Positions 5,134-40,597 of a stretch of DNA of 40,597 bases are shown in pieces. How positions within the stretch are numbered: the first letter of the stretch is position 1; the number at the start of each line of letters is the position of its first letter. The translations under genes were made by a program, and so were the position numbers. The stretch is from Klebsormidium nitens. Its lineage: Eukaryota > Plantae > Klebsormidiophyceae. Location: assembly GCA_000708835.1 (NCBI GenBank), contig DF237670.1, positions 1 to 40,597 on the forward strand, written 5' to 3'. The notes beneath the pieces were generated by a model. It saw nothing but the letters and a program-made list of their open reading frames with translations, was not told where the DNA came from and searched no databases.

Positions 5134-5221
5134 GCTCTTTTTAGCCCAGTGGGCAAAGAGTTTGGTCGGGGCTCGGACGGCTCGAGCCTCGAGGTCCAGG
5201 GTTCGAGTCCTGGCAGGAACG
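5134..5221 (+). tRNA. tRNA-like element (tRNA pseudogene or SINE head); isotype not assignable
   Basis: A-box TAGCCCAGTGG (5142-5152), B-box GGTTCGAGTCC (5200-5210), T-arm CCAGG/CCTGG, imperfect D and acceptor stems. AT-rich TTATTATATAG lies about 30 nt upstream. The anticodon region is non-canonical and no T-run terminator follows immediately. Confidence 0.5.
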
Positions 5222-5689
5222 TCAGTATTCCGGGAGTCAACTTCTAAAAGGGATGTCGTGGACACGTGTCGATTTCCTATGTTCTTGCCTGTCGTGAACC
5301 ATCGCAAGACAGCTTTGATGCAATTTGTCGAAAGCGTTACATGCGTTACATATATACATGTCAGTCTATATGATTATTCGATTTCGATTTCGATACACCA
5401 TGTTTGACATATATAAGACAACTCTAGACTCGCCAGCTCGAGCCTGGCCGACTATTTCACACTCCGTGACACGTGTCGAGGCCTTAGCCCTCAGCCAAAG
5501 TGGTGTCAACGTAGCATGCGTACGGTAATGGAGTCTGGACCTGCGTGTTGTCATCGTTGAGCATTTTCGGTTTATGTTGTCATTAGTGGATTCGCCCCAT
5601 GCCTTTGATACGCACGGGCTTTAAGAGAAGTATCCATTCTGCATCCGTGTTGACTAGTAGGGGGCCGGGGCCATGTTGACAAATGAAAG

Positions 5690-5782
5690 TGCTGTTGTGT
5701 TGGTGTAGAGGTTAGGGGTGGGTGCGGGTGTGCGACCCGTGATAGTTGACGGTTATGATTGCTGGTTGGGTTGCCCGGGGCT
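5690..5782. mobile_element. Degenerate copy of the G-rich MITE-like core
   Basis: GGTTAGGGGTGGGTGCGGGTG (5710-5730) and a downstream GTTGCCCGGGG match the element at 28345-28512. Terminal inverted repeats are not clearly preserved. Confidence 0.35.
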
Positions 5783-6398
5783 TCTGAATCTTAGGAGACA
5801 AGCCCCTTCGGGGACTGCTTCTGGAGGGCTGGAGCCTGGTACGTAAGAACTTGCGGCAACGACGGAGTGCATGCCACTTGGCAGCTCCTCATTCAAGACA
5901 TGAACTTTCTCTTCGGTACTAGGAGTTCGGACTCCGGGAGACGACTGCACTCCGACCTCTTCTCTGAGCACTGTTTGAATTCTGCTCTTGGATACCGTAT
6001 GCTCTTGATTAGTCAACAAACAAGAAGTACGTACGGTATATTTCGAAGTGAAGTATGAACCCTTCAGCGACATTTCGGTTGTGAACCTCGAGACCCCAGA
6101 ATCTCTTCTGCAGGCTTCAGCCTTCAGTACTGTAGCTCTTTTCAAAGTAGTCAGCAAGCCAGCAAGCTTGCTTCTGTAAGGGCGTTCTCGTTGTGACTTG
6201 TAGGTAGTACCTAGACAGATTTTGGGTTCACTCTGTTGCCATCGCCATTGCCACCTGCAGAACCTCAATTGGACCTTTGGACAGGCTTCCTGCGCTTGTC
6301 CGTCTTTGTCAAACAAGTTTTGTCATGTACGACGCTGGAAGGCAGTAGAAGTTCTTGCTCTTGTGCCATTGCATCTTACATACAGCACAGCAAAAGAT

Positions 6399-28794: not shown

Positions 28795-32654
<3,860 letters not shown>

Positions 32655-34949
32655 CCTGAGTCTCGCAACTGCGCGGTATTGCTTAGGGCCATTTTGCGGG
32701 TATGCAATTGGTATTGCAAGGCAGTTGGCTTCCAATTGTTGTAATGTAGGACTACCAAACAGGCAGGCTTCGAGATGTGAAGCACTATGATGCCCCGTGT
32801 GAACCTCGAAAACAATAGATACACTGATAGCTGCTGCTAGTTGATTGGATTATGCGAAATGTTGCCTGCAGAATGAAATTCGAGAGTGCTGTCGTGATTG
32901 AATATTGTATGGAACTTACGCGACTCTACTCATGGTACCGTCGGTGCCTTGTGTAGAGGGTCCGGGTGACTATTGATGGGGTGCCTCATTCCATAGCACA
33001 AGCTGCTGGTACAGTTGAAGCAGCATGTCAAGTACTACCACCCTAAGAGTACGGAATCAGTCGAACTTACATCCATGTCATTGGCTGAGGGCGGCCCTAG
33101 CTAGCATATCGACGGGCTAGCTATGTCATGCCAGTATGGATCGAGTCCTAATGGAGTCGAGGCCGATGCGAAACAAGCCATGCTGTCAAAAAAATGTATT
33201 GCAACAAACAAACAATCAGGGATGTCTGCAACTTATGCACCTTATGATTGCAAGCTCTGTGTTGATGCGTCGCAGCGTATGATTACATGCCCCAGCGTTT
33301 ATGTCGTTGTGCAAATACAAGAGCAGCCGTGTGCTGCTCAGGAACCTTATGCTTCGGCACTGGATGAAGATAGGGCAAACAGGTACTGGCACCGGCGCCA
33401 TAGCGCACCCTCTGAGAGTCCCTATAACCAGCAACTTACAAAAGGTTGCAGTAGCAACCTTGCAGTCCAATTAAGATGAGCCCGCAGGTAACTAGACTGG
33501 GCTCAGAACTGTCCGGTTATATGCCTATATGCTCAACATGCAGACCATACGCTATGGGCTCGACTCAGGACCCGCCTAGAGCTCATCGAGCATGACAGCT
33601 AGCTCACCTGGCTCGCAAGCTAAGTTCTATAAATGGCGCCGCGGGCCGGATGGTCCCGGCGACGGCGGGCCTGGCTGCACGGCCGGCTTTCAGCAATGCA
33701 CTGGGCCGCGCCGCGCCACATGACGCAATCTAGCGCCGAATGTAAGGAGCTTTTTGCACTAACATGCGACCGTCAAAGATATTGCTGCATCAGTCAGTGC
33801 ACCGTCGCGTCTGGCTCGCATTCCCAGAGATGGATTGGGTTTGGCATGGGCTAGCTGCGCAGCAACGTCCGTCTGCCTTGTCATGTTGCCGATTAGATGA
33901 TCTGGGTTCGCCAGGCTGCGTGGCCGCTAACAGAGATAACCAGACTATTGAGCGCGGCGGCGGACATCGGCGTCTTCAAAAGAACAGGCGCGATCAACAT
34001 AGTCCGTCATGCCCCCATCGCCACTGAAGACCAACCGCCTACGGCAATGAAAGTGTGGGCGCGGCAACGTACAAGTGAGCGGCACGCGGCGCAGCGCATG
34101 GCCCGCCCGCCCGCACCCAACCGGGTACATCCTGAGCCTGTTCAGATTTTTCTGCGGAAGCCGACGCCAATCTACTCTTGCCAGTACAGGGAGACGACTT
34201 TGGTCTCAATCGAAGGTACAATTGAAAGATCGCCTCGAGGCAGATGGTCCGGTTCAATATCGACCACCAGTTAACTTCGCCTCTCTTCGATCGCGCACTA
34301 CGTCGTTTCCAGACAGTATCACACTTCTGAAACTGTGCATGGGGTTACGTGATCAACGGCCCGATGCACAACACGCGTCAAATTCATATGGGGCAACATT
34401 ATTGGCCCGTTAATTCCAAGCAAATGCTTCTCACCTACAAACTATACAGTGATATGTCCGCTCATTACTGATGCTGACTCTCGACATCCTATCACCTTTG
34501 ATGGAACAATCGTGTTTGCCGAAACTGAACTCACAGGGGATTTTTACATGAAGATAATCGTCAACTTAAAGGCCCTTTTCACTTGGTACACTGGGCCAGC
34601 TACTACTCAAAAACGTCCTGCTGGACACTTGGAGAAGTAGAGTTTTACCGCGGATTCGCTGGTCTTTCGACCGCTTTGAAGCCGCAATCAGACTCCAACC
34701 GCTGGTCAACTCTGTCGACGACAAAACTTTGCTCTGACATCAATTTAGCGCCCAATCTCACACCATCGGATAGTTACTCTTCCTAGCGCTCAAAGACTCT
34801 CGAGCAACAACCAAGACAGGTAGAAAACATTGTTCAAGATATCAAAGCCACCGCACAAGTTTTTGCGCCGTGAACTCCCCTATCTAAGATTACTGATAGA
34901 GGGACATAAATTACTGCTCCCGGTTCTCAACACAGACCGAGTATAACTC

Positions 34950-37900
34950 CTAATCGGCGAGATACCCAACGAGCACAGAATACTTTTTCCCGGTTGCCAA
35001 GCTCTCGGCGGGCTGGATCCACGTGTACTTCAGGGATCCCCTCAGAGTGTAGCTGATCCACGCGGGAATCCCCGCTTGAATCCCGGCAACTAGAGCGGCG
35101 GCCACGTCCGGAGCCTCCGCTTGCTGCAGACACGAAAGGAACCGGGTACACGCTTCGGACCGATCCGAGCAGCTCTTAGAAAGGCAGATTGAACTCAAGA
35201 AAGATAATAAGCCGAGATGAAAACAAGGTAACCAAATTGAAATGGGGGAGTTAGTCTGGTGGTTAGGGTGGGTGTGGGTGCGGAGCAGGTATCTTTTTGG
35301 GTTGAATTTCCTAGTGTTAGGCGAAGCTTATTATCATCTCTGGCTTATTATCATCTTTCTTGAGAAGTATAAAGAGCAGCGCCCTTTCACGTTGCTCAGA
35401 AAAGAAGATCTGAGTCCGCGAGATTTTGGCAGTGAATGAGTGAAACGACGGGAATGTCACGCTCCGGCCACTGAGCGTTGAATGAGTCAGTGGAGCCTCT
35501 TACGTTTTCGAGTCTGCTTACCTCTGGCAAAACCGGGTCAAGGACACTTTATCAGAAACGGCGAGAAAGGGTGGGGCTTTCTTAGTGCTTACGCGTCTCC
35601 CTTGCGACGAGGAGTCACTCGACCCTCATTTGGAAGCCTCGAATCGGACAAGCACATGTACGGCACCGGAACAGAACTTGGAAATTACCTGGAGCGTCTC
35701 GCCGCTTAAAGCTGGAAGGTCTTTCTTGCAACAAATTTAATGTAGATCGAAATGCGGAGGAGCAGACGAATCGGACGGAAGCAGGACAACGAAGACCGGA
35801 ACTTACCTGGGGCGTCTTGGCGGCCTTGGAGAAGTCCGCTCTGTGCGCCATGGAAAGGCCGGATTGGCTTTTGAACCGAGATTTTGAACCACGGAAGGGG
35901 AAAACAACCGGAACGGATCCAAATGGAACTTTTCTGGCGGAGCCTTGGGAGGTTTTGAGAGAAATTTTGCCATGGGAGCGTGCGTCGTGACCCTGACCAG
36001 AGAGGAGCGAAGACAAACCGGAACGGAACCGGAACGGAACTCACCTCAGGTGTCTTGCCGGCCTTGGAGAAGTCCGCCCCGTGCGCCACGGAAACGTAGC
36101 CCGAGGCCGGATCGGCGTCCCGCACAACGACGTAAAAGCCGCCAGGAATTACGCCCGGAAAGACCTGCTTGTTTGTGGCGTCGAACAAGGGCTGCGCTGA
36201 GCCAGGCGCGAACTTGATCTTCTCCCCGAAGTACGTCGCGAGAGTGTAGGCCGCGATGGGGTTGCACGCCGTGTAAGCCGCATAAGTACACTGGGCGATC
36301 TCCGTATAGCCCTGCAGAAGACGGATATAAATTATGGGTCGTTGGATGGGCACCACGTGGCCTTGCGGGATGGAGAATATGGTGGCACGTTTACAGCAAT
36401 GGGTTTGCACGGGTTTGAGTCGCATAAGTGCACTGAGCGATCTCCGTATAGCCCTGCAGAAAAGGGACATACGCTGCTGACAAGGGGCAAAGGGGAGGCG
36501 CTGAGGAATGAAACGGTCATTGGATGGGCGCCACGTGGCCCTACGGGTGGAGAGCATGGTGCCATACTTATGCAGTTGCGAGTGCCCCCAGATGTGTCTG
36601 TAAGGAAAGAGCGCAATGGAGAGCCTTAAAAAGGCAAAGAAGGAGGCTCTTTGGCGACCAGCGAGCGGAGAGACCACGGATTCGGTCGCTCGCCACGTCC
36701 TGCAAACAGAGGGTACACGCGACGTGGCTGCTCCGCGAGTAATGCTCAGATTATCCCGGAGGAAACACCGCGGATGGGTGCTTGTTACTTTGCTTGGACC
36801 TAACCTGAGCGGAAAAACTTCCATTGGAATCAGAAAGACTTCTCCTGACGTACTCCGAACGGCTTGAAATAGGTGACAAACGAGACCGATCGGGCAAGCT
36901 CGCAAGGAGCACTTTACTCAAGTGGGAGACATTCGCTGCCCAAGCTAAACTTCGCACACCCTCTTTGCTCGTGGATTACGTGTCTTGTCCCAAACGAAAG
37001 CTCAAAACACTTGCCTCCTGCAGAGAGCTTCGGAAAACATGTGCTTTTTCAAAATGAGGGCCTCGATAAACAACGAGAGTCGGAAGAACGAGGACTTACA
37101 GAGGCGACGATGGATCCGTCCGGCAGTAGTGGTCCAACGTAGGCCTTCTTGAGAGAGAGAGGATTGCCGTTCCTGAAGAGATATTGGGTCAGCCCCCCCC
37201 CCGCCGCGGCGATCCCCTGGTACACTTGCAGCCTGTTGGGATACGAAGGGATCCCCACGTCTTCGAAAGCCTCGTCGAAGTACATCCCGAGAGAGGACAG
37301 GTTCGCGTGCGCGACGCGGCGCCAACTGGCGCCATTGACGAACGGGTAGAAGCCGTTGAACTGCCACTTAGGGCTCTTGGAATTGATCTCTGCGTAAACC
37401 TGTGCGGGGAGGGTGCGTCGGGCTGTTAATAGTGAATCGAGACCCGTTTTTAAGACCACTTGTCAAAACATGAAGGAAAGGACCCGCGGGGTTCTTGACC
37501 AGTATCAATCTTCAAATGCGTCGGGGTCAGTTCAAGAGCGCTTTTGGGCTTTGATGAAGGGACTTTTCAGTCAGTCTTTGAATTATTTCAAGATCAGTCT
37601 TCATCCGGGTCCTGAGTAACCGCGCGAGGTCAGGGTGCAACGTCACAGAGGTCTGTGTAGGTTTTGCACATCATTCTGTGAACCTTCTGTGAACATTCTG
37701 TAAACCTCTCAGGAAGTGTTCACGTGTCCCAAGTGTTTCTTTCCGAGGTTCTGAAATTTCTTTATAAAATTTACGTGGATGTGAGCCAAAGAATTGATCA
37801 AAGAACCAACTTACAACAAAGCACGTCCCAAGTTGTGAGAAGAATGTACCTTCTTCCTGTATGTTCATGTTGTGATGAGTTCCAAGTTGTGATACGAGAA

Positions 37901-39039
37901 AAGAGAAGCTGACAAGGGCATATGCATGTAACGATACACGGTCCCACCTTCAAGCAACTTCCAATGGGCGCCAGATCCATGACACCAGACGCACGACATC
38001 CTCACAAATGAGAGCTCACCAGACAAACAATGCTACATTCGAAAGATCAATTTGGCTCAGGAAGGGAGGCTTTTTCTTGTATTGTCCCAGCTAACAGCTC
38101 TGTTCCTTCAGACTGCCCGGAAGATTTCGAGCAGCAGAAGACGAGACTTCAAAAGCAGCAAAGACTGCACAATCCAAGCTCTCAACCTGCTCAGCTTACG
38201 TCCTTAGCGTCGGTGCCTGACTGGATCTCCCGAACGACTGCGAGCACCAGGTTTTGGACGGTCGCATATTCGCAGCCAGTTTCTTTGGGAGGGTCCGCAA
38301 TGCACGTTGACTGGGCTTGGGCGCCAATCTGCATTTGGAAAGGAGTTTCAAAGTGGTCAATAGCGGGTCTGATTGGCTAATGCTGCTTCTCTTGTTCTTG
38401 GCATTGTCTTTGATTTCTCAGTGCTTCTGCAGGAATTCTGCGGGCCGGTCCTAAAAGGTTGATGACAGGTGGGGAACAACATAAGCAGCAGCTGCCGGCA
38501 GTGGCGTATCAGTTTTGGAGTCTTTGGACTTTGAATCGCAAATTCAAGACTCACTCAACATGCTTCAGTCATGCCGTTTACTTTGAAGCCGACAGGGCCA
38601 GAATGTGTGAGGACTGCGCAGAAGAATTGGAAAGAGGATTCACATGCCAAAACCAGCTAGCAGAGATAGTTGCAGAGTGGAAGAATTTTGAGAAGCTTCT
38701 TAGATTGAACACACTGTCAAACTTTTCAGTGGGCCGCCAGAGGAGCTCTGCAAGCTGGAAGAAAATCCCATCGTCAATGCAATGGGGCTAATCGCCCAGC
38801 AAGAAACGGAGTATGTGTTTAAATTCTACGCTTATACACTTTAGCAATGTCAAAGCAGCATTGCACGGGCAAGCAGCATTGAATGAGAGACAGAGAGAAG
38901 CAAAGTCAGCAACCAATTTGCACTGGCACAGGAGACATATTGAAGCAGCAGACCCTATTTTGCCGTAGCTCACCAGCACGCATGCGGCCAGTGCCGCGAC
39001 AAGTAAAAGAGCCCAGGCAGGACGGCAAAGCGGCGCCAT
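34950..39039 (-). CDS. Secreted protein of two tandem Cache-like (sCache_2-type) domains, 311 aa, no output domain
   Basis: Exons 39039-38974, 38328-38200, 37399-37100, 36311-36045, 35123-34950; all phase 0 and GT-AG (936 nt). Signal peptide MAPLCRPAWALLLVAALAACVLIGAQA. Repeat 1: VYAEIN...FYPFV...RVAH...AGGG...YLF...LKKAYV...VASGY. Repeat 2: FYVVVRD...VAHG...GK...W-x-SY...KY-x-W...VLVGY. The gene model is strong; the Cache assignment is by motif recognition only. Confidence 0.75.
35191..35367. mobile_element. MITE-like element (~175 bp) in the last intron of the Cache-like gene
   Basis: Left arm CTCAAGAAAGATAATAAGCCGAGATGA is the inverted repeat of the right arm TCATCTCTGGCTTATTATCATCTTTCTTGAG. 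Core GGTGGTTAGGGTGGGTGTGGGTGCGGAGC. Same family as 16172-16344. Confidence 0.7.
35641..36100 (-). repeat. Four tandem copies of the Cache-gene exon 4 3' end plus donor (~114-124 bp period)
   Basis: True donor at 36044 (CCTGAG|GTGAGTTCC). Copies at ~35930 (donor mutated), 35806 (CCCCAG|GTAAGTTCC, preceded by a near-intact AH(G/R)ADFSKA(G/A)KTP codon string) and 35688 (CTCCAG|GTAATTTCC). Confidence 0.85.
36255..36570 (-). repeat. Tandem duplication of the acceptor plus Cache-gene exon 4 5' end
   Basis: TTCTGCAG|GGCTATACGGAGATCGC occurs at 36311 (true) and 36453 (copy). The intronic block TTGGATGGGC-x-CCACGTGGCC is also duplicated (36341-36388 and 36521-36567). Confidence 0.88.
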
Positions 39040-39122
39040 CGTGAAATCTCAGTACGTTATTAGGAATCAGGGATCCTTCTCTCTCCGGAGAAGCGCAGCC
39101 AGACCGATCGACGCTGAATGGT

Positions 39123-39200
39123 GTACGTACTGGGGGGGTACCGTATGGCAAACTGTACAGTGTACGGTACATACTAAGTACAGTGTACACTGCAGTGTAC
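39123..39200. promoter_or_regulatory. GTAC cluster (putative SBP-domain / copper-response element array) upstream of the Cache-like gene
   Basis: Nine GTAC in 78 bp (39123, 39127, 39138, 39155, 39162, 39167, 39178, 39185, 39197), 84-161 bp upstream of the ATG at 39039, plus a tenth at 39052. Includes two TGTACGG, the reverse complement of the SBP site CCGTACA. Confidence 0.7.
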
Positions 39201-40597
39201 GGGGGGGGCAGCTGGCGGCGATCGGCCCGGCAGCCGCCATGTTGTTCGCCAATCATTGAATTAATTGGGCCCCGGCGGGCGGCGGCCGCCGGCCGCGCCC
39301 TTGGCCGCCCGGCCGCAAGCAGGCCGCGCCCGCTTCAGGCCCGCGGGGGCCGCAGCGCTCCGCTCTGCCGCTCGCAGCCCGTTTGATTCCAGAGGAGTGC
39401 AGGGATACGCTTGAGTCGTGAAGGTTATGATCAGTCAGGTTTAAACACTTCAGAAACGTTAAATACCGGTTTGTATCCGGATTTTATCCTCTGCATGTTG
39501 CAATATGCCGTCGCTTGAGTCTCACTGCACTTTTGATTTCCGGCGGCTCAATCATACTGACAGCTGAAATAAGTCGTTTACCAAACGGGCCCCCGCAAAA
39601 AGGCACCAGGACCTATTGAGCCCGGTATCGCGTTTAGCAGAGCGGGTTGCGCGCGTTGTTGCTTTGCTGTCGGTTGCAGAGTCGATCCTCAGAGCCAAGA
39701 ACGCAAACGTCTGTCTCAAGGAACGGCCAGCCGCGGGACTCTGGATTGAAGATCACATTCATGTTTACAAATGAAGATCGGTGCACTCAGGGGCTGTCCA
39801 AGTATTGACGAGATTGTGCGGGCCGCGGAACCCCGTGTTGAACTGCCGATGAGCCTGACGGTGCGACAGAAACGTGAGATTTTTTGGCAACAACACACGA
39901 GACGAGGCAGCAAAGATACCATGGTGGGTCGACTTTCTAAAACTCAGAGGACACTCTGTAGCGCCCACGTAGCGGCGCTTTCTTGATGTAACGAAGTGAA
40001 ATTCAATATGTCTTGCACGATCAGAATGAGGCTTTGCCTCTCACACGATAAGGGCAGTACAGCAAACCAGTACTGGTCACGTCTACGAAGTATACCAGAA
40101 CGAGTTTCAGGTAACTGGAAAATTGACCCGGCTGTTCCCGTGTTCCGGGGCTGCTTGACGCCCAAATCTGATCATAAGTTGGACATATAACCACTCTCTA
40201 ACCAGCCCATAACCAGCGCATATAACCATCCATTATGACTAAGGGCCAAAAACTCCGGTGTATCTCCATGCGCAAGCTCGTCCCGGGCTTGCGGGATTCG
40301 TGGGGTATCGTACCCTCTCCTCACTTCAGACCGATTCGTGATGTGATTGGGTCATAAAACTGTATACTCGTAGTTCAAGAGGGAGACGGAGATAGAGGGC
40401 AACCTGCAGGTGTAAAGACGTGAAGCGCATACCAGCTCTTTCAGTAAGGCCAAAGGCTAACCGTCCCAGAACGAGACGACCCCGCAAATTATACAGAGGA
40501 ACCTCAAAGGCGATACTATTGACGAGCAACGAGAATGGAGTCGGGGGAGAAGCATTTGCGCGTTCTCATGAACACTTTCGTGAGCCCTCATCAGCCG

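What the first reader, a model, noticed from the sequence alone, without database searches (positions are those of the whole stretch)
39052..39202. Dense GTAC array suggests the Cache-like gene is under copper-deficiency (CRR1/SPL7-type) control
Seen: 9 GTAC in 78 bp, against about 0.3 expected at equal base frequencies, with two TGTACGG, overlapping palindromes (CAGTGTACACTG, GTACACTGCAGTGTAC) and flanking G7/G8 runs, immediately upstream of the start codon. Known: GTAC is the core of copper-response elements bound by the SBP-domain factors CRR1 (Chlamydomonas; also hypoxia and Ni response) and SPL7 (land plants). Inference: the secreted Cache-like protein is a previously unrecognised member of a Cu-starvation or hypoxia regulon, a candidate extracellular acquisition or sensing module.
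Basis: partly seen in the sequence, partly recalled or inferred. Interest (0 to 1): 0.8.

Follow-up and report, generated by a model that had tools for sequence, protein, structure and literature searches.

The report
GTAC-packed promoter of an algal gene
Nine copies of the four-letter word GTAC really do sit in 78 bases just in front of a transcribed Klebsormidium nitens gene for a secreted sensor-like protein; they are probably a docking platform for the alga's SBP-type gene switches, but nothing here ties them to copper.

Summary
There are nine GTAC cores at 39123-39200 and a tenth at 39052. The next-best cluster on this 40.6-kb scaffold has 3 per 100 bp, and 300 shuffles never exceeded 4.

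RNA contigs from four studies show a spliced minus-strand gene, KFL_007210060 of Klebsormidium nitens (311 aa, signal peptide, dCache-like). Its ATG is at 39039 and the mapped 5' end is near 39049. The array is therefore untranscribed proximal promoter, 84-161 bp upstream of the ATG.

- **For a regulatory role:** the only paralog in the genome carries its own, non-homologous GTAC cluster upstream. K. nitens has two SBP-box factors, one of them of the SPL7 type.
- **Against a copper-specific reading:** the one available ortholog has a single GTAC in the matching interval. There is no match to the SPL7 ChIP motif GTACTRC. The protein has no copper feature. The mRNA is present in cultures from 7 studies, whose copper status is unknown.

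This scan had already found at least eight similar GTAC islands on other DNA of this genome, in front of unrelated genes, so this is one member of a recurrent promoter class.

Best reading: a homotypic SBP-site cluster whose signal is unknown (0.45). Copper control is about 0.2. Interest is modest.

The parts
39123..39200 (.). GTAC array: nine GTAC cores in 78 bp, 84-161 bp upstream of the minus-strand ATG
39052..39055 (.). Isolated tenth GTAC, 13-16 bp upstream of the ATG and at or just upstream of the furthest mapped mRNA 5' end
39122..39128 (-). First of three GTGTACG heptamers (CGTACAC on the gene strand). These are the closest matches to the SBP consensus TNCGTACAA. The other two are at 39160-39166 and 39195-39201.
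39181..39200 (.). Nested perfect palindromes: a 12-mer at 39181-39192 and a 16-mer at 39185-39200. A further 10-bp palindrome lies at 39152-39161.
39132..39138 (+). G7 run inside the array. With the G8 run at 39201-39208 it forms a 12-nt direct repeat (GTAC, one base, then the G run) 70 bp apart.
   Evidence: family D4
39207..39370 (.). Adjacent GC-rich island of GGCC/GCCGCC/CGGC words: 6 GCCGCC in 96 bp and 8 GGCC per 100 bp. Distal promoter; function unknown.
38974..39049 (-). Exon 1: a 5' leader of at least 10 nt, the ATG at 39039 and the 22-aa signal-peptide exon. The donor follows 38974.
38200..38328 (-). Exon 2 (43 codons, phase 0)
37100..37399 (-). Exon 3 (100 codons)
36045..36311 (-). 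Exon 4 (89 codons)
34950..35123 (-). Exon 5 coding part (57 codons plus the stop at 34950-34952). RNA contigs continue about 470-520 nt further as 3' UTR.

Best explanation
The array is a homotypic cluster of binding sites for SBP-domain (SPL-type) transcription factors in the proximal promoter of KFL_007210060, a transcribed gene for a secreted, output-less dCache-like protein of Klebsormidium nitens. Many GTAC cores within about 80 bp would give high, possibly cooperative occupancy by one of the alga's two SBP-box proteins, so the gene would be switched by whatever signal controls that factor.

Shown: the density, the position upstream of the mapped transcript, the gene model and its transcription, and a second, non-homologous GTAC cluster upstream of the only paralog.

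Inferred: SBP binding, the direction of the effect, and the signal. Copper deficiency through the SPL7-type factor is the leading single candidate. I put it at about 0.4 given SBP binding, so about 0.2 overall.
For: - Nine GTAC in 78 bp against a maximum of 4 in 300 shuffles. The next cluster on the scaffold has 3.
- GTAC is otherwise at its expected frequency and gives the most extreme 4-mer cluster for its density.
- RNA contigs of four studies splice the gene with GT..AG introns, reach at most about 39049 and give zero depth over 39080-40597. The array is therefore upstream, untranscribed DNA.
- The paralog KFL_000610080 has 8 GTAC in 163 bp (L001 5152-5314), built from different palindromes. 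Scan-wide Poisson P is about 0.006. No other cluster of 6 or more per 100 bp exists in the 58 kb read.
- The ortholog's only two upstream GTAC sites share 12-nt and 9-nt runs with the first and last sites of the paralog cluster, in the same order. Control GTAC sites reached such runs in 0 of 169 and 3% of cases.
- Three cores read CGTACAC on the gene strand, an 8/9 or 7/9 match to TNCGTACAA (consensus from PMC10796333).
- K. nitens encodes two SPL proteins, one in the single-copy C4 group.
- Functional precedent: a 65-nt stretch with four GTAC boxes is required for copper-deficiency induction of Arabidopsis FSD1 (PMC4682440).
Against: - No binding or expression experiment exists, and no paper mentions the gene.
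- The only orthologous genomic contig (L003; exons 83-85% identical in DNA) has 2 GTAC in 719 bp upstream and 1 in the interval that weak collinear matches place opposite the array. The dense array is therefore lineage-specific.
- A more distant homolog has no proximal cluster.
- Part of the count comes from internal duplication.
- Flanks are not enriched for the SBP consensus beyond chance, and GTACTRC is absent.
- Similar islands precede unrelated genes elsewhere in the genome. That fits a broad SBP regulon but equally a mutational process.
Confidence: 0.45

Rival explanations
1. Copper-specific version. The array is a set of copper-response elements bound by the SPL7/CRR1-type factor only when copper is scarce (or under nickel or hypoxia), which would make the Cache-like protein part of a copper-starvation regulon. 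This is nested inside the best explanation and is not exclusive of it.
For: - The GTAC core and the promoter position hold.
- An SPL7-type (C4, single-copy) SBP gene exists in K. nitens.
- Copper-regulated promoters in plants carry clustered GTAC: FSD1 has 4 in 65 nt, and a banana miR397 promoter has 11 (PMC6848093 abstract).
Against: - No GTACTRC match.
- No metal-binding feature in the protein, and the dCache relatives returned bind organic ligands.
- The ortholog lacks the array.
- The mRNA is assembled full length in runs of several studies, although the copper status of those cultures is unknown.
- GTAC is also used by non-copper SBP factors, for example LCRF for low CO2 in Chlamydomonas (bioRxiv 10.1101/2020.07.09.195545).
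- The other GTAC islands in this genome precede genes with no evident copper link.
Confidence: 0.2
2. A neutral, lineage-specific low-complexity palindromic repeat. Local duplication or slippage of a short GTAC-containing unit produced the array in the K. nitens lineage, and it has no regulatory role.
For: - Internal direct repeats are present: a 17-nt unit 23 bp apart at 76% identity, GTGTACG three times and CAGTGTAC three times, plus nested palindromes.
- A second low-complexity island (GGCC/GCCGCC) lies directly beside it.
- The array is absent from the ortholog.
- Clusters of other short palindromic words occur in K. nitens intergenic DNA, for example TGCATG-type words at L001 12078-12330.
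Against: - The paralog has an independent GTAC cluster made of different sequence.
- At least eight more GTAC islands were noted in promoter positions in this genome.
- Slippage alone does not explain why the shared word is always GTAC.
- It is not a simple tandem array: Tandem Repeats Finder reports nothing there.
Confidence: 0.25
3. A platform for a different, dimeric factor that reads the longer palindromes (for example the 12-mer at 39181-39192), or a DNA-structural element (cruciform, or G-run dependent), with GTAC only a by-product.
For: - There are perfect 10-, 12- and 16-bp palindromes.
- 7 of 9 cores have T on the 5' side (TGTAC) on at least one strand, more than the 44% expected.
- G7 and G8 runs are associated with the array.
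Against: - The paralog's palindromes are different words sharing only GTAC.
- The single-strand fold is unremarkable (z = -0.7).
- Two G runs 60 nt apart are a poor quadruplex.
- I know of no plant factor family with such a site (from memory, not tested).
Confidence: 0.08
4. A fragment of a dispersed repeat or transposon that happens to lie upstream of the gene.
For: Transposon-derived elements are common in this genome. A 294-bp MITE-like element sits in the paralog's upstream region, and there is a dispersed repeat in intron 4 (table 7).
Against: - There is no second copy of any part of 39040-40597 in the scaffold or in L001.
- No terminal inverted repeats bound the array.
- RNA contigs with loose ends mark a repeat in intron 4 but none here.
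- The rest of the genome could not be searched.
Confidence: 0.02

Closest known systems
Arabidopsis FSD1 promoter GTAC-box cluster (SPL7-dependent copper-deficiency element)
   Same: Several GTAC cores are packed in a short stretch of proximal promoter. In FSD1, four of the six boxes lie in 65 nt, and deleting them abolishes copper-deficiency induction (PMC4682440).
   Different: Here there are nine cores in 78 bp, largely palindromic and partly duplicated. No expression or binding data exist. The SPL7 ChIP motif GTACTRC is absent.
Chlamydomonas copper-response elements (CuRE) of CYC6/CPX1, bound by CRR1
   Same: GTAC is the essential core. The elements lie in the promoter of a nutrient-regulated gene and are bound through an SBP domain (as summarised in PMC12722077 and PMC8430956).
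   Different: As I recall, though the primary papers were not held, the CuRE promoters work with one or two cores rather than a dense array. The target here is not a known copper-sparing or copper-uptake gene. K. nitens is a streptophyte with two SBP genes, against 28 in Chlamydomonas.
Chlamydomonas NAB1 promoter GTAC pair, bound by LCRF (low-CO2 response)
   Same: GTAC cores lie about 160-170 bp upstream of the start codon and are bound by an algal SBP factor.
   Different: The signal is CO2, not copper, and there are two cores rather than nine. This case shows that GTAC does not by itself imply copper.
Other GTAC islands of K. nitens found earlier by this scan (s1-361053, s1-324354, s1-305566, s1-299593, s1-261864, s1-291034, s1-358442)
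   Same: Same genome, same core word, promoter or divergent-promoter position, often palindromic, and several precede genes for secreted proteins.
   Different: Those islands are longer (380-800 bp, 12-23 cores). This one is the most compact, and it has RNA evidence placing it outside the transcript plus a paralog/ortholog comparison. I could not read the other islands.

Membership tests
Copper-response element (CuRE) / SPL7-CRR1 target promoter | GTAC core(s) present | tested here: met
   Nine cores at 39123-39200 and one at 39052.
Copper-response element (CuRE) / SPL7-CRR1 target promoter | Located in the promoter, upstream of the transcription start | tested here: met
   The spliced RNA contigs end at or before about 39049, with zero depth over 39080-40597 in four runs. 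Contig ends give only an approximate start site.
Copper-response element (CuRE) / SPL7-CRR1 target promoter | A cognate SBP-domain factor of the SPL7/CRR1 type is encoded by the organism | not tested
   From the literature only. PMC10796333 lists two K. nitens SPL genes, in Groups 2 and 4, and Group 4 carries the C4 first zinc finger. That Group 4 equals the SPL7 clade is my inference.
Copper-response element (CuRE) / SPL7-CRR1 target promoter | Extended SPL7 ChIP-seq consensus GTACTRC | tested here: not met
   No match on either strand in this array or in the paralog's (motif from PMC12722077).
Copper-response element (CuRE) / SPL7-CRR1 target promoter | General SBP consensus TNCGTACAA / CCGTAC flanks | tested here: inconclusive
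   There are three CGTACAC sites (two with CCGTACA) on the gene strand. However, 4 of 9 cores with a 5' C is what chance gives once GTAC is fixed.
Copper-response element (CuRE) / SPL7-CRR1 target promoter | Transcript induced by copper deficiency (or nickel or hypoxia) in a GTAC- and factor-dependent way | not testable with these tools
   The runs are contigs only, their conditions are coded, and depth is not comparable. No paper covers this gene.
Copper-response element (CuRE) / SPL7-CRR1 target promoter | Conservation of the element upstream of orthologs | tested here: not met
   The ortholog contig L003 has 2 GTAC in 719 bp (at -309 and -92). The distant homolog L004 has none within about 550 bp. 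The K. nitens paralog does have a cluster.
Cache (dCache) extracellular ligand-binding domain (the downstream gene's product) | Significant match to Pfam Cache models | tested here: inconclusive
   P0001 itself has no hit. The paralog is sub-threshold for sCache_2 (E = 0.0076). Distant HMMER hits P0005 and P0006 (E = 5e-8 and 2e-7 to P0001) pass the sCache_2/dCache_2 cut-offs.
Cache (dCache) extracellular ligand-binding domain (the downstream gene's product) | Tandem PAS-like (PDC) fold | tested here: inconclusive
   The model is weak (mean pLDDT 52.7). The top Foldseek hits are nevertheless almost all dCache chemoreceptor domains (TlpQ, PctD, PacA, Mlp24; probability about 1, TM-score 0.2-0.3).
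Cache (dCache) extracellular ligand-binding domain (the downstream gene's product) | Extracytoplasmic location; usually joined to a membrane anchor and an output domain | tested here: not met
   An N-terminal signal peptide is present, but the 311-aa product ends after the second module with no transmembrane or output part. It works like a free ligand-binding module and is not a canonical receptor.

The most novel reading that the evidence does not exclude
Klebsormidium nitens, with only two SBP-box factors, uses super-dense, palindromic GTAC islands as a dedicated promoter class for a compact SBP regulon rich in secreted proteins. That regulon would include this Klebsormidium-restricted free dCache protein and its paralog. 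It would be the early streptophyte form of the SPL7/CRR1 nutrient switch, and the islands would make the whole regulon readable from sequence alone.
Probability: 0.15. Interest if true: 0.6.

Novelty: new member of a known kind. Interest (0 to 1): 0.3.

Why it matters
If the array is a working SBP platform, it offers a compact, easily mutated test promoter. It would serve to ask what the two SBP-box factors of an early-diverging streptophyte alga do, and whether the copper link of SPL7/CRR1 predates land plants. With the other GTAC islands of this genome, it would define a regulon that can be listed by a simple density scan. If it is a neutral repeat, it is a warning that counting GTAC words is not evidence of copper regulation. 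In either case nothing here yet changes what is known about copper homeostasis.

Tried and rejected
- **Dispersed repeat.** BLAST of 39040-40597 against the scaffold and L001 found only self-palindromes. The rest of the genome was not searchable.
- **Non-coding RNA or structure.** There is no Rfam hit at E <= 0.1 over 38500-40597, and the single-strand fold has z = -0.7.
- **Simple tandem repeat.** Tandem Repeats Finder reports nothing in the array.
- **Genome-wide GTAC excess.** The tool's 139 against 81 expected disappears under a second-order Markov model (1.05).
- **Bidirectional promoter.** No annotated gene and no RNA contig lie to the right of 39080, up to the scaffold end.
- **Promoter homology with the ortholog.** The local alignment score was 22, against 18.7 +/- 2.4 for shuffles. 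Only weak collinear 9-11-mers were found.
- **More orthologous loci.**
  - The metagenome scan with P0001 gave no confirmed relative.
  - The word search with exon 3 returned only the one Logan fragment.
  - The whole-library HMMER search found 7 proteins in all.
- **Literature.** No paper names the gene or its paralog. No paper was found on Klebsormidium copper regulation or GTAC promoters. The primary CRR1 paper (PMC1311908) is not held.
- **Pfam on single exons.** Nothing was found.
- **Not done.**
The full-length protein used (P0001) is the database's own record, returned by a search with an unspliced ORF by reference. It reads the same as the five exon translations in order.
  - Known copper-regulon genes of K. 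nitens (COPT/CTR, cytochrome c6, Fe-SOD) could not be fetched without typing sequences from memory, so their promoters were not examined.
  - No complex prediction was run.

Full report
**1. The observation**

Reading 38700-40597 and an exact search give GTAC at 39123, 39127, 39138, 39155, 39162, 39167, 39178, 39185 and 39197. That is nine cores in 78 bp. One more lies at 39052.

- The two TGTACGG, the 12-bp and 16-bp perfect palindromes, and a further 10-bp palindrome at 39152-39161 are all there.
- The G8 run (39201-39208) flanks the array. The G7 run (39132-39138) lies within it.
- The scaffold has 139 GTAC. The second-densest place has 3 per 100 bp.
- 300 dinucleotide-preserving shuffles gave at most 4 in 78 bp. 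The Poisson expectation of such a window anywhere on the scaffold is about 4e-7.
- Outside the array GTAC is at its expected frequency under a second-order Markov model (1.05).
- For its density, GTAC is the most extreme 4-mer cluster on the scaffold.

The count is inflated by internal duplication. GTGTACG and CAGTGTAC each occur three times, and a 17-nt unit recurs 23 bp away at 76% identity. The array is nevertheless not a simple tandem repeat.

**2. What it sits in front of**

The window is the whole scaffold DF237670.1 of Klebsormidium nitens NIES-2285, assembly GCA_000708835.1.

Twenty public runs from seven studies hold parts of 34900-40597. I laid contigs of four of them, one from each of four studies.

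- They show GT..AG joints on the minus strand.
- The exons are 38974-39049+, 38200-38328, 37100-37399, 36045-36311 and 35123 down to about 34380.
- All coding exons are in phase 0 and translate cleanly: 22 + 43 + 100 + 89 + 57 = 311 codons.
- The ATG is at 39039 and the stop at 34950-34952.

A word search with the unspliced 399-codon ORF around exon 4, given by reference and restricted to the exon-4 residues, returned the database record KFL_007210060 (P0001, 311 aa). It reads the same as the five exon translations in order.

- The longest contig reaches about 39049, 10 nt upstream of the ATG.
- All four runs have zero depth from 39080 to the scaffold end.
- No gene is annotated to the right of the ATG.

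The array is therefore untranscribed proximal promoter, 84-161 bp from the ATG and at least 74 bp from the mapped 5' end. Contig ends are only approximate start sites.

**3. The protein**

- Pfam finds nothing in P0001 or in its single exons.
- A full HMMER pass over 1.84 billion representatives found only seven proteins:
  - P0001 itself;
  - the K. nitens paralog KFL_000610080 (P0002, 608 aa, two tandem copies of the module, 48% identity);
  - three genomic fragments;
  - two distant proteins (E = 5e-8 and 2e-7).
- The two distant proteins pass Pfam's cut-offs for sCache_2 and dCache_2.
- An AlphaFold model from a shallow alignment is weak (pLDDT 52.7).
- Its Foldseek hits are nevertheless almost all dCache ligand-binding domains of bacterial chemoreceptors, such as TlpQ, PctD, PacA and Mlp24.

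'Secreted, output-less Cache-like protein' is therefore a fair description. The family is almost confined to Klebsormidium-like algae. Nothing in the sequence suggests metal binding.

**4. Anatomy of the array**

- On the gene strand, three cores read CGTACAC, two of them CCGTACAC. These match the SBP consensus TNCGTACAA at 7-8 of 9 positions.
- Four of nine cores with a 5' C is what chance gives once GTAC is fixed.
- 7 of 9 cores have a 5' T on at least one strand (TGTAC).
- The SPL7 ChIP consensus GTACTRC has no match (motifs).
- The array has no copy elsewhere on the scaffold or in L001.
- It has no Rfam match and no unusual fold.
- Directly distal lies a second low-complexity island (39207-39370) rich in GGCC/GCCGCC, with 6 GCCGCC in 96 bp.

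**5. Comparative evidence**

*Paralog (L001, ATG at 6001).*
- There are eight GTAC in 163 bp at 5152-5314, which is -849 to -690 from the ATG. Scan-wide Poisson P is about 0.006.
- The cluster is built from different palindromes.
- A 294-bp MITE-like element with perfect 28-bp terminal inverted repeats (5533-5826) lies between the cluster and the gene.
- In the 58 kb of this genome that I could read, the only two clusters of 6 or more GTAC per 100 bp are those upstream of these two paralogs.

*Ortholog (L003).*
- L003 is a 3.8-kb Logan contig of run SRR23617307. Its exons are 83-85% identical in DNA and 87-90% in protein, and its ATG is at 720.
- It has only two GTAC in its 719 upstream bases, at -309 and -92.
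- The promoters are not alignable.
- Weak collinear 9-11-mers place the K. nitens array opposite an L003 interval that holds a single GTAC.
- The contig stops at -719, so a more distal cluster like the paralog's cannot be excluded.

*Distant homolog (L004).* This JGI metagenome contig has no proximal cluster.

*A lead.* The ortholog's two GTAC sites share 12-nt and 9-nt exact runs with the first and last sites of the paralog cluster, in the same order and orientation. An 11-mer further upstream is also collinear. Control GTAC sites reached such runs in 0 of 169 and 3% of cases. This hints at conserved GTAC-containing elements in the family, but it rests on short matches.

No further orthologous DNA was found.

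**6. The same thing elsewhere in the genome**

The scan's own notes list at least eight other GTAC-dense islands on other scaffolds of this genome. They sit in promoter or divergent-promoter positions.

- The genes they precede are varied: small secreted cysteine-rich proteins, a secreted beta-propeller, PrmA/ARM and NADAR/DnaJ.
- One earlier follow-up concluded that its pile-up was real but its link to copper untested.
- I could not read those loci, so this is context and not independent support.

It does show that the present array is one member of a recurrent class and is not a peculiarity of this gene.

**7. What is known**

- GTAC is the essential core of the SBP-domain site (PMC10796333; PMC8430956).
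- CRR1 and SPL7 use it for copper-deficiency responses, and SPL7 ChIP-seq refines it to GTACTRC (PMC12722077).
- In Arabidopsis FSD1, a 65-nt stretch with four GTAC boxes is required for induction (PMC4682440).
- A banana miR397 promoter carries eleven GTAC (PMC6848093 abstract).
- GTAC is also read by non-copper SBP factors, such as LCRF, which drives NAB1 under low CO2 (bioRxiv 10.1101/2020.07.09.195545).
- K. nitens has two SPL genes, one in Group 2 and one in Group 4. Group 4 is single-copy, is not miRNA-regulated and carries the C4 first zinc finger. That this is the SPL7 clade is my inference.
- No paper mentions KFL_007210060 or its paralog, and I found none on copper regulation in Klebsormidium.

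**8. Reading**

The best-supported mechanism is a homotypic cluster of SBP-factor sites that drives or gates the promoter of this gene (0.45).

- *Shown:* the density, the promoter position, transcription of the gene, and the paralog's independent cluster.
- *Inferred:* binding, the sign of the effect, and the signal.

Copper deficiency is the most obvious candidate signal. It has no support here beyond the core word, and several small points count against it:
- there is no GTACTRC;
- the array is not conserved in the ortholog;
- the product has no link to copper;
- islands precede heterogeneous genes;
- the mRNA is present in cultures of several studies, though their copper status is unknown.

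I put copper control at about 0.2 overall. The main rival is a neutral, lineage-specific palindromic low-complexity repeat (0.25). It is favoured by the internal duplications, the neighbouring GC-rich island and the ortholog's lack of the array. It is disfavoured by the paralog's cluster and the recurrence of GTAC in particular. A non-SBP palindrome reader or structural element (0.08) and a transposon fragment (0.02) remain possible.

**9. Verdict**

- It is a new member of a known kind, a clustered GTAC promoter element. The scan had already met it several times in this genome.
- Interest is modest (0.3) until one expression or binding experiment is done.

Noticed in passing
window 39207-39370: A GC-rich low-complexity island lies directly distal to the GTAC array. 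It has 6 GCCGCC in 96 bp, 8 GGCC and 14 CGGC per 100 bp, and several imperfect palindromes. It may be a second homotypic site cluster (GCC-box-like) or a slippage product.
   Followed up: partly
window 35794-35856 / 36032-36094, 36271-36329 / 36413-36471, and 36337-36369 / 36515-36547: Both splice junctions of exon 4 have 86-88% identical 'echo' copies inside the flanking introns.
   Followed up: partly
window 35706-36905 (-): A 399-codon stop-free ORF runs through exon 4 plus 594 nt of intron 3 and 339 nt of intron 4. This is unusually long for intron sequence at 50% GC and is probably linked to the junction echoes.
   Followed up: no
window 35188-35304 (intron 4): Many RNA contigs fit only this short stretch and run on into unrelated sequence (loose ends, table 7). 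This indicates a short dispersed repeat that is transcribed at other loci.
   Followed up: no
L001 5533-5826: A MITE-like 294-bp element with perfect 28-bp terminal inverted repeats lies between the paralog's GTAC cluster and its start codon. Both of its ends abut GTAC.
   Followed up: partly
L001 12078-12330: A cluster of TGCATG/CATGCA-type words (8 TGCA and 9 ATGC per 100 bp) lies in the intergenic DNA between the paralog's 3' end and the Nup160-like gene. It is reminiscent of RY/Sph elements.
   Followed up: no
L003 356-366, 409-420, 628-636 versus L001 5079-5089, 5150-5161, 5311-5319: Three collinear exact matches (11, 12 and 9 nt) link the ortholog's upstream region to the K. nitens paralog's upstream region. 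Two of them are centred on GTAC. They may be conserved family-specific cis-elements.
   Followed up: partly
P0001 / P0002 (KFL_007210060, KFL_000610080): The free secreted dCache-like family is almost orphan. Only 7 proteins among 1.84 billion representatives match at E <= 0.001, and the only full-length relatives are the two K. nitens genes.
   Followed up: partly
window 28820-28908: Three GTAC lie within the 100 bp upstream of position 28918, the annotated low-coordinate end of the plus-strand acetyltransferase gene (28918-32654). This is a small cluster at a second putative gene start on the same scaffold.
   Followed up: no
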